From Perna viridis (Eukaryota), in NCBI GenBank assembly GCA_037379345.1, contig CM074511.1, forward strand, positions 61,200,862-61,264,861: 64,000 nt of DNA, in the 5' to 3' direction. Both the position numbers and the translations under genes were made by a program. Numbering within the stretch: the stretch's first letter is position 1; each line of letters opens with the position of its first letter. Positions 12,395 to 58,670 of this stretch are shown piece by piece. The notes beneath the pieces were generated by a model. That model searched no databases and was not told the origin of the DNA. It saw only the letters and a program-made list of their open reading frames with translations.

Positions 12395-13000
12395 ATGCAT
12401 TTGATGGATGCGCTTAATAATACAATTGGATGTAATGGAACTGCGAACAATCAAACGGCTTTAGCAAGGAACTATGACGCTGAAGGAGCTCTAAAATTCA
12501 CTGTTGCCGTGGTTATGGTTTATGGAGTTGCTGTTATTGGAGTTTTTGCGGTCAGCTATGTAAGCAGACGAAAGCCACAAAACTTCGACGTAGATAAACA
12601 GGCAAGAACGTACGTAAAAACATTGGACAATGTGAGACTTAAGCTTGAAAGGAATAACCGATTACATTCAATAAACTCATTATTGAAAAATATTCATGGA
12701 GGTAATGAGCTACAAGTACCTAAAACTAAATCTATTCACGATGGAATTTTATCTTATGTAGCATTCCCTGTTATGGTAGCATCTGGAGATCCACCAAAGA
12801 GCCTTACAGGAAGTGTCAAACGAAGTAGTTCCACCGGAAGTGAAACAATAACATCCCCATTAAATTCGGACTATCCCAGTAGACTAACTTTATCAGTGCT
12901 TGCTGAGGAAAATGAAAGTGAATTCGACGATATAGACGTGTTAATAGATAATGAGAGAACAGAAAAAGAAAAATGTGAGTTTTTTGTTTCCATATCGTGA
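12395..13000 (+). CDS. 201-aa single-pass type III membrane protein with KCNE/MinK-like architecture
   Basis: Longest complete ORF in the track, non-repetitive. Three N-glycosylation sequons (N8, N14, N19), no signal peptide, one TM segment (F35-V56), then SYVSRRK...D...YVK and a Ser-rich, acidic tail. Possible acceptor near 12344; AATAAA at 13073-13078. Confidence 0.9.
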   Translation: MHLMDALNNTIGCNGTANNQTALARNYDAEGALKFTVAVVMVYGVAVIGVFAVSYVSRRKPQNFDVDKQARTYVKTLDNVRLKLERNNRLHSINSLLKNIHGGNELQVPKTKSIHDGILSYVAFPVMVASGDPPKSLTGSVKRSSSTGSETITSPLNSDYPSRLTLSVLAEENESEFDDIDVLIDNERTEKEKCEFFVSIS

Positions 13001-13228
13001 TACATGCTATAGTGGTGATTTGAAACTTTTCCCATTAATATCATTTTTTTCCTTTGAACGTGATCATATTTTAATAAAAAGATTTTGTACGTTTGTTTGC
13101 ACTTTTTAAATGCATTATTATTTGAAACGAAACTAAGCGTTTATGCATTTTATGGGGTGAACATTTTGATGGTCATTTGTAACATTTTAAACTACCTTTG
13201 AAAGGTGATTGAAAGTCAACTTTCAGAG

Positions 13229-13346: not shown

Positions 13347-14947
13347 CTTACATAGAAATGCCAATCGCGTAACAACTTCAGTGTTACAAGTAAAGCAAGA
13401 CAACAAATAATGTACGGTTAGAATAATTATACATATAGTTCATATTGTAGAAAAGGATGATAAAGTTATATGTCTGGATGTCACAAAAACATTAATGTAC
13501 CAAAAGCATGTCGAAAAAATATTTAGCTTAAAATCACATTTAAACAACGTGGTCGTAATACTAGTATGTCGACGAAACATTTAACTGAAAAAGGAGCTAT
13601 TTATCAACATAAACGTTGGTAAAGGAAAAAAAAAAAGTAAATTGTTTGGAATATTCTTCGAGAAATTAGGATATAAAATAAGGGTAACAACAAAATTACC
13701 GAACACTAATCCGCTCCAATATCAAGTCAAGTGAAGTCCAATATTAATATGGCAAAAGCAGAAAAACCGAAGTGCCAATGAAAAGTGACATATTCAAATA
13801 CAAAATCATTCGAGAACACATAAAATGACATCGACAAACGACCAGACAGACAACGAAAAACACACTAAAAGCATCACTAACTCAACCAAAAAGTTGAAAG
13901 ATACCTTAGTTATAGTAACAGACCACTTCTCGTTTTCAAATATAATCACGATTTTTAATCGATTTATGAGCTATATAATATTGTAATTGACTTCTTAGTC
14001 CTCTGTGATCACGTATTTGTTCTCAATGCTTAAAGTTATTAATTCGTTCCTCTTATCCTTCAGGATAATGGATTTCCTTCCTTTCCAACTATGACTTTAG
14101 CTTTACTCAATATATTCATTATGAATGAGGATTTCCCTTAAGTTGTTGATCGTTTGTGTTCTGGTATACTTTTATTATAGGATCTTTTTTAAGGTAAAAA
14201 TCACAAAGTGACAAAGAATAAGAATGTAAGGAAATACCCTAGTGCTTGTTTTGCGACAATTTTGCTTCAATTATACTTTTAATAACAATTCAGTTTTATA
14301 TAACTCTTAAACATAAACCATTTATCAGCTGCATTCATCCCCAAAAGTTGGACAAATGAAGAAAATAGTTATTACAAGTTTTAAAAAATACATAACACAC
14401 TGTCAGTATATAAAACCTTTGATCATCATCTACGTCCGTCGGTAAGACATACCAACTATTTACATTCATTTGTAGTTCTAAACGAATACCGATTTGCACT
14501 ACTTTTTTTGCCTACATTTAACATGCATCTGACTTTTTGAACTTTTCATTGAGAGTGCAAACAACAAAAATGTGCTGTATCAATTTAAAAACGCATCAAT
14601 GATACTAAAACATAAAAATTTAGATAACATGTATTCTTAGGTACAATAAGCAGCGATAAATTATACACAAAAGATGTATTTTTTTCATTAAACTTTGTAC
14701 ATTTTCGGTATATCTACGCTTTTACAAGACTATCTGCCTTAAATACCCTGTAAAATTCTACTGTAACAATGAACAATAGATATATGTAGAATAGCAGAGT
14801 ATGTAGTTTGTGATATATAGAATCTGTCCAGTGGTTATTTCTTACTCTGTTGAAATAAAGTTTTTGTAAGTCATATGTACTATTACTATGAATCATATAA
14901 ATGCAGTTTTTCTCACATCTTACATGCATTAATAACAATAAAGTGAA

Positions 14948-17611
14948 TTAATAGAAGACGAAGACGACATCCAAACCACGAGGACAAAGTATTATGGAGG
15001 TGTAGACAAAACTGGCCTGAAAATAGAAAGTGAAATGAAACAGACAATCGTTATTCTAAGTATGAGAAAAAATATAAATCATTTAATTTTGCTCAAGTAA
15101 AAATTTAAGTAGAAGGTTTTATATAAAAATTTGACACTGCAGTAAATGTAGTTCTGAAACTTTACTAAATGGATCTTTTATATATCATTCAACAAAAAAG
15201 CACGTATCAAACTTTGGAGATTATATTTAAAATTTGATATGTACACTTCCATTGCTTGCAAAATATAATTGATTTATGCAATAAGATGATCAACTTTTAA
15301 AAGAAAGGAAAACGCTGATGTGTAGATACCTTTTTAAGAGGAAAGAAGCAGTAAGTAAAGTTTACGAAAGAATAACCAAGGAAATCAAGTTTCTAGGAAA
15401 ACCAAAAGAATGAAATCCAGGGATAAAGACAAAGATAACAGATACACACGACAATGACATGAAATTTCTCAAAACGCGTGCAACAAAAACAAAAACGAAA
15501 ACAAAAGTGAATGAACACCTCTTACTTTACTAAAAACTGGGAGCACGGACCAGGTGGACCGGTAGTGTAAGCGTCCTCTGCTTTTCTAGAAACGCCGAGT
15601 TTTTCATCAAAAATTCAAATCTGTGGTAAACGATTGAGGATAGAAAAAAACATGACATGGTGAACAAAACCGTTGTCATGGCAGATGGATACACCGTAAC
15701 GATCTACGAGTTCATTATGACGACCATAAAACTTCTGTAGTGATGACTCAAATCAACACAACCCTGTTCCAGAAGCCTATTTGTAAGTAGTCTATCCCGG
15801 TACAAAAAGTTTGCGTAGTTACGACAAGCTCTTAACTTATGAGTTATGATATGAAGCGTCCATGCCCAGGTGCTGAAGGGATGTTGCCACAGATACAACG
15901 TTGACAATATGGAATGAAAAGTCATGGCGTTTATCGTATAGTTCGGTCAATAGTTCCCCTTTCCCGTCGATTTCTAAGTGTGGGTCTAGAAATGAGGCTG
16001 ACTTCACAGTGTCTGTACTATCCTTTATCTCAAGTTCTTTAGGATAGATGCGATGTATAAAATTCCCGAAATTAGGATTGGGTAAAGATAAGACGTCATA
16101 TATTATGTATAACGGAAATCTGGGTAAACGATGCTGGATCAGCTATAAAATCAGCCTTAAAATAACTTCATTCTTACAATTTGTTGATGAAAGATATCCC
16201 TGATTTTGACATTAGCGGAACTCAAGCAGGATAACCATGCTGTGTGAACTAGAAGAACCGCAGTCGCAGTAAAAAAACCAAACAAACAAACAAACAAAAA
16301 CAAAAACAAATCAATACAAAACGAACAGAAACGAAAACAAAACAATCATAGTATTCCCATTTAATGTTGCATAAATATAATACCATAACTACCATTTTTT
16401 TTTAGATTTTCAACTTTTAGACCGTTGTTTATAAATATATTGAAAATAAGTTTTGTAATAGAAAAATGCGTAAGAACCGATTTCTCGATTATCCCAATTC
16501 TAAATTCACATATGAAGTTATATCCCTTTTACGTAACGGTATAATACAAACCTGACTTCAAGCATGATAAAAAAGGAAATATTACATGGTTTTAGTGATG
16601 TTATTCCTCCTTTAGTATTTGTCAAATTATCCTCTACATGATTTTTATGCGTCACATATTGTAAAATACACATCTGCTTTTACAATGTATGAGTTGTTAA
16701 TGTAAAATTATTACAGCATGCACCTAACTAGATAATGATAAAAACTTTTTATTTCACAATTTCTCGACCAATTTCCTGTCAGTTGTTTTGCCTTCTTCAT
16801 CATAGAAACGTGTAAGATAAGAATGCAAAAACTAATTGAGGGAATAGCTTGTATGATTTTCATTGATGAGTGCGTACAAAACATGCTTGTGGACTTACTG
16901 ATAAACTAAAGGGAACTTATTACATCATATCAAAAAGAGACAGAATGCGTGTAAGGAAATGAAACGATTGATCTTATTTATATGCGCTTAGTACATATAA
17001 AAGATAAATTTGAATATGTGAAGCCCTGAATGTTTCAAAATCAGTTCACCAAATCTTTTTTTAAACAGTCCGTTCCAAGGACTTATTTAATTGCACCAGC
17101 GGAGCAAAACCTGTCAAGATAATCTACTATTACTAAGTATAAGTGCCAAATAAAAATGACCTTGTTAGTTTTCTAATCAAGAATATCACGTGGTCTTTGT
17201 CTCTATCTTTGGATTATCATAAAAGAGCAATTTCACAAATTGACTAAATACTCTTTAATATTGCATAGTCTGACGATACATTAAATATTGTTACACTTGT
17301 ACGACTAAATATTATCTTAAATCGTAACTAATTAACTAACTAGCATATAACGTCTCTAATCAACAATGTAGTATTATTTGTACTGCCAGTTAAGTAAAGG
17401 ACATTTAGTGGCCCGAGACCACACTTTATGTATTCGGATTAACGAGACCTGTTTCTCAATTGATACGTATTACAGTATTTAAATATACAACAACTTTACC
17501 CGTTGAAATCCATAAACAATGCAAGGAGATAGATAAAAGGTAGTAGATGAACATCGGATATTTTGAATAAAACCGACCCTTGCGTTTTGCAAACCATAGA
17601 AACGCCGCCAT
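14948..17611 (-). other. Putative spliced transcript (exons 17611-17500, 16248-16178, 15016-14948) encoding an 83-aa hydrophobic peptide, a uORF, or non-coding
   Basis: aaaATGGCGGCG start; exon 1 MAAFLWFAKRKGRFYSKYPMFIYYLLSISLHCLWIST G|gtaaag (phase 1). Exon 2: ttcttctAG|...ATT|gtaaga, open only in the matching phase. Exon 3: very strong ctttctattttcAG acceptor, ASFVYTSIILCPRGLDVVFVFY*. Confidence 0.45.
15370..16085 (-). mobile_element. Penelope-like (Naiad-type) retroelement fragment: RT C-terminal half plus pseudo-LTR
   Basis: Reverse complement gives NPNFG...YPKELEIK-DST...LEIDGKG...CGNIPSAP...RACRNYANFLYRDRLLTNRLLEQG with frameshifts, then the same terminal repeat as at 10750-10950. Confidence 0.9.
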
Positions 17612-58062: not shown

Positions 58063-58123
58063 CGACCAATATGTCAAAAACATCCATTAAAAGTTATTAT
58101 ATTCAAACCGTTTCTAACTAAAC

Positions 58124-58670
58124 TCTTATTTACAATGATAACCTGTTGAAACCAAACTTTGTCTCTTATTACAATAATACCCTATTTTAACCAAACATTG
58201 TCTCTTATGACAATGATAACCTGTTGAAACCAAACCTTGAATCTTATTACAATGATACCCTGTTTTAACCAAACATTGGCTCTTATTACAATGATAACTT
58301 GTTGAAACCAAACGTTGTCTCTTATTACAATGATAACCTGTTGAAAACAAACCGTGTCTCTTATTACAATGATAACCTGTTGAAACCAAACCTTGTCTCT
58401 TATTACAATGATAACCTGTTGAAAACAAACCGTGTCTCTTATTACAATGATAACTTGTTGAAACCAAACCTTGTCTCTTATTACAATGATAACCTGTTGA
58501 AACCAAACCGTGTCTCTTATTACAATGATAACCTGTTGAAACCAAACCTTGTGTCTCTTATTACAATGATAACCTGTTGAAACCAAACTTTGAATCTTAT
58601 TACAATGATAATCTGTTGAAACCAAACTTTGAATCTTAGTACAATGATAACCTGTTGAAACCAAACCTTG
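58124..58670. repeat. Minisatellite, 39-bp unit, ~14 copies
   Basis: tcttattacaatgataacctgttgaaaccaaaccttgtc repeated; explains the four overlapping repetitive ORFs in the track. Confidence 0.97.

What the first reader, a model, noticed from the sequence alone, without database searches (positions are those of the whole stretch)
12395..13000. Candidate molluscan KCNE/MinK-like potassium-channel beta subunit
Seen: single coding exon, short N-terminus with three N-glycan sequons, no signal peptide, one TM, and the segment EGALKFTVAVVMVYGVAVIGVFAVSYVSRRKPQNFDVDKQARTYVK. Known (recalled): KCNE proteins share this topology and a single coding exon; KCNE1 reads [41 protein letters not shown], with the same aromatic-GxxxxG, SY-basic cluster and downstream D...Y[IV] pattern. 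KCNEs are characterised mainly in vertebrates, with divergent MPS proteins in C. elegans. Inference: this may belong to an unannotated lophotrochozoan KCNE-like family; the long Ser-rich tail (KRSSS) suggests phospho-regulation.
Basis: partly seen in the sequence, partly recalled or inferred. Interest (0 to 1): 0.75.

Follow-up and report, generated by a model that had tools for sequence, protein, structure and literature searches.

The report
Mussel single-pass protein, distant KCNE-like kin
This is a real, expressed, intron-less mussel gene for a small one-helix membrane glycoprotein whose gene family grades into a sister family that weakly matches the vertebrate KCNE potassium-channel helper proteins, so it may be a very divergent invertebrate relative of them, but this is not proven.

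Summary
Window 12395-13000 (+) is an intact 201-codon ORF, the longest in the window. It has three N-terminal sequons, no signal-like start, one TM helix and a basic cluster after it. Full-length orthologues in Mytilus are 56-57% identical. Contigs of four runs, which the tool only guesses to be RNA, lie collinear and unspliced over it.

The KCNE reading is partly supported, and only indirectly.
- Direct tests fail. The ORF has no Pfam ISK_Channel hit, 1 of 56 family members hits it at E 0.027, and family profiles find no solved KCNE chain.
- The ORF is one of 11 single-frame paralogues in its genome, 9 of them on contig C1.
- These paralogues form a sequence continuum. Its other end is a family conserved in bivalves, abalones and an annelid. 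Two of that family's members pass Pfam's ISK_Channel cut-off (26.3 and 29.5 bits). Its best solved match is KCNE2, at a non-significant E of 0.4.
- Protein-language-model neighbours of the ORF include 12 KCNE clusters among 30 hits.

Papers I read state that no kcne genes are known in invertebrates. I put KCNE-type descent and function at about 0.45. The KRSSS stretch is not conserved.

The parts
12395..13000 (+). Complete coding sequence: 201 codons plus a TGA stop, in one exon
   Evidence: ORF list. Full-length orthologues of 193-203 aa, conserved to the last residue. Collinear contigs with no joint inside.
12395..12490 (+). Predicted extracellular N-terminus (residues 1-32), with sequons N8, N14 and N19 and the conserved Y-D-x-x-G-A motif just before the helix
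   Evidence: Sequons and charge balance. G12, C13, N14, T16 and Y27-A32 are invariant in 8 orthologues. G31 is invariant, and D28 and A32 are at least 90% conserved, in 56 family members.
12491..12559 (+). Transmembrane helix core (residues 33-55; the model's helix is 29-58), with conserved Y43, G44 and G49
   Evidence: Hydropathy. AlphaFold2 helix 29-58, with mean pLDDT 97 for residues 31-50. Conservation.
12560..12694 (+). Basic cluster S-R-R-K-P followed by a conserved cytoplasmic juxtamembrane helix (residues 62-100)
   Evidence: AlphaFold2 helix 62-100, with block mean pLDDT 80-97. R58, R59, K60, P61, D65, D67, Q69-R71, K75 and L96-G102 are invariant in orthologues.
12743..12787 (+). Short conserved hydrophobic patch (residues 117-131, G-I-L-S-Y-V-A-F-P-V-M-V-A-S-G), too weak to be a second TM helix
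   Evidence: Invariant columns G117, L119, S120, A123-V128, S130 and G131. The 19-residue hydropathy maximum there is 1.1. The model's pLDDT is low there.
12788..12877 (+).
   Evidence: Not conserved among 8 orthologues. Mean pLDDT 45-55 in the blocks covering this linker.
12878..12997 (+). Conserved acidic C-terminal tail ending in a hydrophobic V-x-[IV]-S terminus
   Evidence: S162, T165, L166, V168, L169, E171, E172, E174, V198 and S201 are invariant.
12139..13062 (+). Smallest span covered by collinear contigs of the guessed-RNA runs, taken as the transcribed unit
   Evidence: X3 record 15 (12139-12859), X1 record 8 (12171-13062) and X4 record 24 (12446-13050), with empty flanks.
13073..13078 (+). 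AATAAA, a possible polyadenylation signal 73 bases after the stop
   Evidence: Pattern search in a script. Its use was not shown.

Best explanation
The ORF is an expressed, intron-less gene for a small N-out, C-in single-pass glycoprotein. Its layout is a short glycosylated ectodomain, one TM helix, a basic cluster, a roughly 40-residue cytoplasmic helix and a disordered acidic tail. It belongs to a mollusc family that I call the 'A2 type'. That family is one branch of a larger lophotrochozoan superfamily with 11 intron-less paralogues in this genome, 9 of them on one contig.

The conservative branch of the superfamily, the 'A3 type' (for example G000:C1:59276332-59276703), matches Pfam ISK_Channel, the KCNE family. 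I therefore read the ORF as a strongly diverged KCNE-like protein. Its most likely role is as an ancillary subunit: its TM helix would pack against a voltage-gated K+ channel, and its juxtamembrane helix and tail would tune gating or trafficking. KCNQ-type genes are present in the genome as possible partners.

Shown here: the gene is real, its topology, its family and the link between the A2 and A3 types. Inferred: common descent with vertebrate KCNE. Pure inference: the channel partner and the function.
For: Real gene:
- Searches support this.

Family:
- A phmmer search of 1.84 billion representatives gave 55 hits at E <= 0.001.
- Every named member is a bivalve or gastropod: 9 named clusters of the 20 I asked about.

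Pfam ISK_Channel in the ORF's own genome:
- A six-frame scan of the genome gave 4 matches at E <= 10. The two best are intact single-pass ORFs at 27.3 bits (over the 22.1 cut-off) and 21 bits.
- As proteins they score 26.3 bits (E 6.7e-6) and 20.9 bits.
- 13 of the 20 members of alignment A3 hit ISK_Channel at E <= 1.
- ISK_Channel is the top Pfam hit for L014 (19.1), P0068 (29.5), P0069 (21.1), P0072 (17.1) and P0083 (14.3).

Link between the A2 and A3 types:
- hhalign gave probability 76.2% and score 41.0. Reversed controls scored 19.0 and 17.1. Of 100 block-preserving column shuffles, 0 reached 41.0 (mean 20.7, sd 5.2, max 37.3).
- The A2 HMM scores 23 of 30 A3-type sequences at 15 bits or more, while reversed controls reach at most 3.4.
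- Two ORFs, L010 and L011, are found by both profiles at genome-wide E of 7e-8 and 1.5e-4 and 8.8e-5 and 1.3e-9.
- The pairwise score matrix is a continuum: ORF-L010 scores 21, L010-L016 scores 30 and L011-L001 scores 30, against a reversed maximum of 5.

Chromosomal clustering:
- 9 of the 11 loci lie on C1, which is 10.0% of the assembly.
- Six of them, with A2 and A3 types interleaved, lie within 57.1-61.2 Mb.

Other support:
- ESM Atlas: a KCNE4 cluster ranks 3rd (score 0.92, 197 of 256 features shared), and 12 of the 30 best hits are ISK_Channel clusters. The Pfam-positive paralogue L001 has the same mollusc and nematode neighbour clusters at 0.93.
- KCNE2 (2m0q_A) is the top solved-structure hit for L001 alone and for the A4 profile.
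- The models of the ORF and of L001 have the same layout: a TM helix, then a cytoplasmic helix, then a disordered tail.
- KCNQ_channel (PF03520) is present at 3 places in the genome.
Against: - The ORF has no ISK_Channel hit at E <= 10, and the genome-wide scan with that model did not find it.
- 0 of 6 A2-type paralogues hit ISK_Channel, and only 1 of 56 family members does, at E 0.027, which is chance level.
- The A2 profile and the union (A5) profile find no KCNE chain among 177,635 solved sequences at E <= 10.
- The A3 profile finds none either, nor does L016 alone.
- The KCNE2 hits have E of 0.44 and 0.4, which is not significant.
- Only 2 A3-type proteins pass Pfam's cut-off. P0080, P0082 and P0086 show no ISK_Channel hit at E <= 1.
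- The A3 HMM reaches 15 bits or more on only 4 of 71 A2-type sequences, and the ORF's direct scores to L001, L002, L014 and L016 are 5-10 bits.
- All the similarity lies in a TM helix and its charged flank, where composition and topology can mimic homology.
- By the Atlas tool's own figures, a third of shuffled proteins also get ten same-family hits.
- Fold searches gave nothing specific.
- No functional data exist.
Confidence: 0.45

Rival explanations
1. The ORF belongs to a lophotrochozoan single-pass membrane protein superfamily that does not share descent with KCNE. Its likeness to KCNE would be convergent, arising from the same topology, a small-residue TM face, a basic stop-transfer cluster and an acidic or aromatic juxtamembrane stretch. 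It would serve another purpose, for example as a partner of a different channel, transporter or receptor, or as a sorting adaptor.
For: - There is no direct ISK_Channel or KCNE hit for the ORF, its close paralogues or its profiles.
- The A3-type hits are borderline: 2 above the cut-off, and KCNE2 at E 0.4.
- Other short TM families (EVI2A, CrgA, NCE101) also appear as weak hits for A3 members, which shows that TM-driven noise is present.
- Papers state that kcne genes have not been found in invertebrates (PMC11659587 and PMC13516689, passages read).
Against: - ISK_Channel is repeatedly the best of 24,736 Pfam models for divergent A3-type paralogues.
- In the six-frame scan of 723 Mb with that model, the two best matches are both members of this one small superfamily.
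- The Atlas neighbours are KCNE clusters rather than other single-pass families, which score 0.82 or less.
Confidence: 0.45
2. It is a member of another known family of small single-pass regulators, such as FXYD, whose defining motif (recalled) also ends in Y-D just before the TM helix.
For: Only a visual resemblance: a conserved Y-D just before the helix and glycines within it. The FXYD motif itself is recalled, not taken from any call.
Against: No Pfam family other than one chance-level hit (tRNA_synt_2f, E 0.15) is seen for the ORF at E <= 10. No FXYD family (PF02038, an accession I recall) appears among the 25 families listed for the 56 members; 72 families matched and 47 were not shown. 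The Atlas neighbours do not include it.
Confidence: 0.03
3. It is a chance ORF, or a decaying pseudogene that makes no functional protein.
For: None found. The runs that cover it are only guessed to be RNA.
Against: About 0.02 such ORFs are expected by chance in the window. Full-length orthologues are 56-70% identical, with an invariant core and a variable tail, the pattern expected under purifying selection. Contig coverage is confined to the ORF plus about 250 bases upstream and 60 downstream, with empty flanks. All 7 A2-type loci have intact frames.
Confidence: 0.02

Closest known systems
Vertebrate KCNE proteins (KCNE1-6 and lamprey KCNE0; Pfam PF02060 ISK_Channel)
   Same: N-out single-pass topology without a signal peptide, N-glycan sequons in a short ectodomain, a basic cluster after the helix, a cytoplasmic helix followed by a disordered tail, and an intron-less coding sequence. 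KCNE clusters are the nearest named neighbours in the ESM Atlas.
   Different: There is no detectable match to the Pfam model or to solved KCNE chains. The protein carries its own conserved Y-D-x-x-G-A motif before the helix, a conserved hydrophobic patch at residues 117-131 and an acidic tail. No vertebrate KCNE sequence was available for me to align directly.
Lophotrochozoan 'A3-type' ISK_Channel-like proteins (for example G000:C1:59276332-59276703; Mytilus edulis, Haliotis and Capitella teleta 'uncharacterized' proteins)
   Same: Same topology, intron-less frames, same contig and an interleaved gene cluster. Related by profile-profile comparison, cross-HMM scores and the bridging paralogues L010 and L011.
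   Different: The A3 type is much more conserved, with a nearly invariant TM and juxtamembrane block from bivalves to an annelid. It scores on ISK_Channel. The ORF's branch does not score on it, and named members of that branch are molluscs only. Direct pairwise scores from the ORF to A3-type paralogues are only 5-10 bits.
C. elegans MPS-1 to MPS-4 (described as MiRP/KCNE-like, nematode-specific; PMC13516689, passage read)
   Same: Invertebrate single-pass proteins proposed as KCNE-like. A nematode cluster of unnamed proteins is the ORF's second Atlas neighbour (0.92) and L001's first (0.93).
   Different: I do not know whether that nematode cluster is the MPS family. No MPS sequence was available, so nothing was compared.
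Flatworm sequences classed as 'Isk potassium ion channel (KCNE)' by an automatic pipeline (PMC4794918, one passage read)
   Same: They come from another spiralian group and carry automatic KCNE-type labels.
   Different: Only counts are given in the passage I read (8 in S. japonicum, 4 in S. haematobium, none in S. mansoni).

Membership tests
KCNE (Pfam PF02060 ISK_Channel) | Scores over Pfam's gathering cut-off (22.1 bits) on the ISK_Channel model | tested here: not met
   No hit at E <= 10 for the ORF, and the genome-wide scan with the model did not find it. 1 of 56 family members hits at E 0.027. 0 of 6 close paralogues hit.
KCNE (Pfam PF02060 ISK_Channel) | Single-pass, N-out, C-in membrane protein without a cleaved signal peptide, with a glycosylated short ectodomain | tested here: met
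   One hydrophobic peak, a non-hydrophobic start, 4 K/R after the helix against 1 before it, and sequons at N8, N14 and N19. N14 and T16 are invariant in orthologues. This is a prediction from sequence only.
KCNE (Pfam PF02060 ISK_Channel) | Coding sequence in a single exon (a feature recalled for KCNE genes) | tested here: met
   Uninterrupted ORF. Collinear contigs with no joint inside. All 11 paralogous loci match within single open frames with no stop inside. L014 has no ATG start in its frame.
KCNE (Pfam PF02060 ISK_Channel) | Sequence or profile similarity to experimentally solved KCNE chains | tested here: not met
   The ORF, the A2 profile and the A5 union profile have no KCNE chain at E <= 10. 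Only the sister branch lists KCNE2 first, at E 0.44 and 0.4.
KCNE (Pfam PF02060 ISK_Channel) | Homology by transitivity to proteins that meet the Pfam criterion | tested here: inconclusive
   The A2-A3 link is well supported. The A3-KCNE link is borderline: 2 proteins over the cut-off and 13 of 20 at E <= 1.
KCNE (Pfam PF02060 ISK_Channel) | Conserved post-TM juxtamembrane motif of KCNE (recalled; seen here only for KCNE2 in the alignments) | tested here: inconclusive
   The A3 type aligns its basic-acidic-aromatic stretch to that of KCNE2. The ORF has a basic cluster and a conserved D...[YF]-[VIL]-K pattern, but no alignment to a KCNE sequence could be made.
KCNE (Pfam PF02060 ISK_Channel) | Assembles with a voltage-gated K+ channel alpha subunit and changes its gating or trafficking | not testable with these tools
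   I could show only that KCNQ_channel-domain genes exist in the genome.
C. elegans MPS family | Sequence similarity to MPS-1 to MPS-4 | not tested
   No MPS sequence was obtainable from any tool. The only lead is an unnamed nematode Atlas cluster.
FXYD (Pfam PF02038, accession recalled) | Match to the Pfam FXYD model | tested here: not met
   No such hit for the ORF at E <= 10. It is not among the 25 families listed of the 72 that matched the 56 members.

The most novel reading that the evidence does not exclude
KCNE-type channel helper subunits are not a vertebrate invention. On this reading, an ancient superfamily was present in the protostome-deuterostome ancestor, survives in lophotrochozoans and has expanded in mussels to at least 11 intron-less genes clustered on one chromosome. 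This ORF would represent a fast-evolving, mollusc-specific branch that ordinary family models no longer recognise.
Probability: 0.35. Interest if true: 0.75.

Novelty: new variant of a known kind. Interest (0 to 1): 0.55.

Why it matters
Recent KCNE papers state that no kcne gene has been identified in invertebrates and that the family arose in early vertebrates (PMC11659587 and PMC13516689; passages read). My four searches that paired 'KCNE' with mollusc, protostome, Crassostrea or invertebrate terms turned up no description of a molluscan or annelid KCNE-like family. The one exception is an automatic flatworm classification (PMC4794918).

If the superfamily described here is truly KCNE-related, the origin of these subunits moves back to early bilaterians. 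It would also provide a set of natural, highly diverged variants for asking which features of a single TM helix suffice to tune Kv channels. If it is not related, it is still an unannotated, conserved and expanded family of small membrane proteins in molluscs, with a KCNE-like build and no known function.

Tried and rejected
Steps that led nowhere:
- Single-sequence and profile searches of solved structures with the ORF, A2 and A5 gave only chance hits: pectate lyase C at E 0.041, SMG-8 at E 0.5 and mS62 at E 1.2.
- Foldseek of the ORF's model against the PDB gave one row at E 7.2.
- VIA-align against 48,161 chains gave only generic long helices and coiled coils at Z <= 5.4. The fold is too simple to be informative.
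- The second word-indexed protein search, with profile A2, added few relatives: 14 proteins, none with a Pfam domain.
- L016 alone against the PDB gave GPCR noise.
- The literature search was badly posed. With min_terms 2 it returned mollusc papers that do not mention KCNE.
- The findings index held nothing on KCNE in this genome. The three notes near this place concern other features.

Ideas considered and rejected:
- A splice donor at the GTGAGT that begins at 12977. Contigs read through it, and orthologues conserve the residues encoded after it.
- A second TM helix at residues 117-131. Hydropathy peaks at only 1.1 there.
- FXYD membership (see the rival explanations).
- P0062 as the orthologue of L010. 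The A4 alignment shows it is A2-type and resembles L007.

Results that cut against my controls:
- 1 of 60 full-column shuffles scored 131.8, above the real 41.0. It aligns only 4 columns at the template's end, and I treat it as an hhalign artefact. The other 59 were at or below 35.
- One X6 contig shows a joint from 10935 to 13038 with non-canonical ends (AT..TA) and a 22-letter side. It starts in a highly repeated element, and I regard it as a repeat or chimera artefact.

Rows I left out:
- P0051 (1151 aa, 12 matched stretches) was left out of A2.
- P0067 (100% identical to L001's protein over 242 aa) and P0073, P0075, P0077, P0078 and P0079 (close to P0072) were left out of A3.
- A5 holds 71 sequences chosen from A2, A4 and the paralogues. 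It omits A2 members P0030, P0032, P0038, P0047, P0048, P0055 and P0057.

Things I could not do:
- Supplements were not opened. Those of PMC4794918 may list the flatworm 'Isk' sequences.
Full report
1. THE OBSERVATION

Window 12395-13000 (+) is an ATG-to-TGA open frame of 201 codons that contains the quoted segment. It is the longest of the 6 ORFs of at least 110 aa in the 64-kb window. The DNA is about 32% G+C, and a stop is expected at 7.5% of codons. About 0.02 frames of this length are therefore expected in the whole window by chance.

The protein has these features:
- N-X-S/T sequons at N8, N14 and N19.
- No hydrophobic start.
- One hydrophobic peak at about residues 33-55.
- 4 K/R in the 15 residues after the peak against 1 in the 15 before it, which predicts an N-out, C-in single-pass topology.

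2. IS IT A GENE?

A word-indexed search of 5.8 billion proteins gave 8 proteins at E <= 0.01 among 150 candidates. They include an identical sequence from assembled public runs, a 70% identical protein, and full-length orthologues 56-57% identical in Mytilus coruscus, M. edulis and M. trossulus. These are named only 'unnamed', 'uncharacterized' or 'Transmembrane protein'.

In the alignment of 8, the stretch from Y27 to G102 is almost invariant. So are a hydrophobic patch (residues 117-131), an acidic block (162-174) and the last residues.

No run on record as RNA holds the stretch, but 14 small runs that the tool guesses to be RNA do. I laid four of them, from four studies. They give collinear contigs at 12171-13062, 12139-12859 and 12446-13050, plus three short pieces from the fourth run, X6. 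No joint lies inside this span. All four runs have zero depth at 11376-11966 and 13937-15315. That patchy pattern suits a transcript rather than genomic DNA, but the RNA label is a guess.

The contigs read through the GTGAGT that begins at 12977, and orthologues conserve the residues encoded after it, so the coding sequence is a single exon. An AATAAA lies at 13073. I consider the gene real, at above 0.95.

3. THE DIRECT TEST OF THE KCNE READING FAILS

- Pfam gives the ORF only a chance hit (tRNA_synt_2f, E 0.15) and no ISK_Channel hit at E <= 10.
- phmmer against solved structures gives no KCNE chain.
- An exhaustive phmmer search of 1.84 billion cluster representatives found 55 relatives at E <= 0.001, 30 of them at E <= 1e-10.
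- I aligned 54 of these with the ORF and P0005, leaving out the 1151-aa P0051, to make A2 with 56 rows. The conserved core is a Y-D-x-x-G-A motif, the TM helix with Y43 and two glycines, a basic cluster, and an amphipathic helix.
- Scanned one by one, 1 of the 56 hits ISK_Channel, at E 0.027. Nine hit DUF4381 (best E 0.0038), well below curated thresholds and which I read as TM-driven noise.
- The A2 profile finds no KCNE chain among 177,635 solved sequences at E <= 10.
- Named members are all molluscs: Pinctada, Saccostrea, Mytilus, Patella, Babylonia, Batillaria and Bulinus. That is 9 named clusters of the 20 I looked up.

4. AN UNEXPECTED LEAD

I searched the window's own genome (723 Mb, six frames) with the Pfam ISK_Channel model. 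There were four matches at E <= 10:
- 27.3 bits (over the 22.1 cut-off; genome-wide E 0.00135) at C1:59276332-59276703.
- 21 bits at C1:39659393-39659587.
- Two 16-bit scraps.

The ORF of the finding was not among them. The two good matches are intact ORFs of 243 aa (L001) and 170 aa (L002) with the same build: sequons, one TM helix and a basic-acidic-aromatic juxtamembrane stretch. As proteins they score 26.3 bits (E 6.7e-6) and 20.9 bits (E 3.2e-4).

L001's relatives number 24 at E <= 0.01 among 311 candidates. They occur in Mytilus edulis, three Haliotis species and the annelid Capitella teleta, and 2 of the 24 carry a precomputed PF02060 label. Their TM and juxtamembrane block is nearly invariant (A3, 20 rows).

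- Of the 20 A3 members, 13 hit ISK_Channel at E <= 1, best 6.9e-7.
- Per protein, the scores are P0068 29.5, P0069 21.1, L014 19.1, P0072 17.1, P0089 15.8, P0083 14.3 and L016 12.7 bits. P0080, P0082 and P0086 have no hit.
- KCNE2 (2m0q_A) is the first solved-structure hit for L001 alone (E 0.44) and for a broader profile A4 (E 0.4).
- The A3 profile and L016 alone do not find KCNE2.

This 'A3-type' family is therefore KCNE-like at a borderline level. It is consistently best matched by ISK_Channel, but only two proteins pass the curated threshold.

5. IS THE ORF'S FAMILY RELATED TO THE A3 TYPE?

Profile-profile comparison:
- A2 against L001 gives 64.6% and against L002 gives 66.3%.
- A2 against A3 gives 76.2%, score 41.0.
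- Reversed alignments score 19.0 and 17.1.
- I ran 100 shuffles that keep the TM block and the juxtamembrane block in place but permute columns within each. They give mean 20.7, sd 5.2 and max 37.3, and 0 of 100 reach 41.0.
- Of 60 full-column shuffles, 59 score 35 or less. One scores 131.8 over 4 columns, which I treat as an artefact.

Scans of the genome:
- The A2 profile finds 7 intact single-frame loci. The A3 profile finds 6.
- Two loci are found by both. L010 (171 aa) has E 7e-8 with A2 and 8.8e-5 with A3. L011 (139 aa) has E 1.5e-4 with A2 and 1.3e-9 with A3.

Cross-HMM searches:
- The A2 HMM scores 23 of 30 A3-type sequences at 15 bits or more, against a reversed maximum of 3.4.
- The less diverse A3 HMM does so for only 4 of 71 A2-type sequences, against a reversed maximum of 8.9.

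The pairwise matrix of the 11 paralogues is a continuum:
- The ORF scores 48 and 41 to L006 and L007, 24 and 20 to the L008 pair, and 21 to L010.
- L010 scores 30 to L016 and 20 to L002. L011 scores 30 to L001.
- The ORF's direct scores to the four A3-type genes are 5-10 bits. Reversed controls reach at most 5.

Position in the genome also links the two types. Of the 11 loci, 9 lie on contig C1, which is 10.0% of the assembly. Six lie within C1:57.1-61.2 Mb with the types interleaved: L016, the L008 tandem pair, L001, L014 and the ORF. I take A2 and A3 to be branches of one superfamily, at about 0.8.

6. INDEPENDENT VIEWS

- The ESM Atlas places three clusters nearest the ORF: an unnamed mollusc cluster (0.93), an unnamed nematode cluster (0.92) and a KCNE4 cluster (0.92, 197 of 256 features shared). 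12 of the 30 best hits are ISK_Channel clusters. Other single-pass families (DUF5527, SRTM1, TMIE) score 0.82 or less.
- L001 has the same mollusc and nematode neighbours at 0.93. It also has a mollusc cluster in which 25% of members carry PF02060.
- The tool warns that such agreement also occurs for a third of shuffled proteins, so I count this as moderate evidence.
- AlphaFold2 with A2 gives a TM helix at 29-58, a break at R-K-P, a confident helix at 62-100 and a disordered tail (mean pLDDT 66.9). L001 with A3 gives helices at 38-90 and 95-137 and a disordered tail.
- Fold searches are uninformative.
- The genome has KCNQ_channel-domain exons at three places, so a classical partner exists.

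7. LIKELY MECHANISM

Shown: the topology, the conserved TM face (Y43, G44, G49), the conserved basic cluster and juxtamembrane helix, and the variable linker.

Inferred: like KCNE proteins, the helix would lodge against a voltage-gated K+ channel. The juxtamembrane helix and acidic tail would then contact cytoplasmic parts of the channel or of trafficking machinery. The conserved GCNxT sequon suggests a glycosylated ectodomain.

None of this was testable here. The rival reading, an unrelated lophotrochozoan single-pass family with a convergent build, is about as likely.

8. COMPARISON WITH WHAT IS KNOWN, AND NOVELTY

[quoted passage not shown] Searches pairing KCNE with invertebrate, mollusc, protostome or Crassostrea terms gave no paper describing a molluscan or annelid KCNE-like family. 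One passage in PMC4794918 reports an automatic pipeline that classed 8 Schistosoma japonicum and 4 S. haematobium sequences as Isk/KCNE. For the remaining papers I saw only the search listings. Of PMC10950684 and PMC11148248 I read only the passages that matched my search terms, and they add nothing on invertebrate KCNE.

The ORF fails the tested membership criterion, the Pfam model, so I do not file it as a KCNE. I describe it as a divergent variant of a KCNE-like kind, with homology unproven.

9. VERDICT

- Confidence in the KCNE-like reading is 0.45.
- Interest is 0.55.
- The more conservative A3-type genes outside this window are the better entry point for testing whether KCNE subunits predate vertebrates.

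Noticed in passing
G000:C1:59276332-59276703 (-), locus L001 1141..1872 (-); also L002 1237..1749 (-), L014 1417..1680 (-), L016 1363..1740 (-): Four intron-less single-pass ORFs outside the window whose best Pfam family is ISK_Channel (KCNE), or second best for L016. They score 26.3, 20.9, 19.1 and 12.7 bits against a cut-off of 22.1. L001's family is conserved in Mytilus, Haliotis and the annelid Capitella. These are stronger candidates for invertebrate KCNE-like genes than the ORF of the finding.
   Followed up: partly
G000:C1:58553282-58554334 (-), locus L008 652..1164 and 1384..1935 (-): A tandem pair of A2-type paralogues (170 and 183 aa) lying 220 bases apart. It is part of a cluster of six family members within C1:57.1-61.2 Mb.
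   Followed up: partly
L014 1417..1680 (-): This L002-like paralogue has no ATG start in its open frame. The ORF list starts it at TTG, with 87 aa, while the open frame is 130 aa. It may have an upstream exon or be a decaying copy.
   Followed up: no
Alignment A3, C-termini of P0081, P0082, P0084, P0085, P0087, P0089 and P0090: Several A3-type proteins, the named ones from Haliotis, end in V-T-N-V or V-T-S-V. This looks like a class I PDZ-binding terminus (a motif I recall), which would fit a channel-complex scaffold link.
   Followed up: no
window 10391-10981, 13543-13739 and 15513-15700: Summed contig depth in the four laid runs is very high here, up to about 145,000 at 10785-10981. There are many partial fits and loose ends, which marks highly repeated, probably transcribed elements. 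The 112-aa ORF at 10404..10742 (+) lies in the first of them.
   Followed up: no
window 58123-58670: A 39-base tandem repeat with 14 copies and 89% matches. It creates the 139-aa and 160-aa ORFs on the minus strand, which are repeat artefacts rather than genes.
   Followed up: partly
window 12201, 12352, 12688 and 12885: Differences between the public contigs and the window. One base at 12201 is left out upstream of the ORF (X1, X3). C>A at 12352 is also upstream (X1, X3, X6). A>G at 12688 is synonymous at K98 by my reading (X3). T>A at 12885 changes L164 to Q in the acidic C-terminal tail, at a position that varies among the orthologues (X1, X4, X6). They look like ordinary polymorphism.
   Followed up: partly
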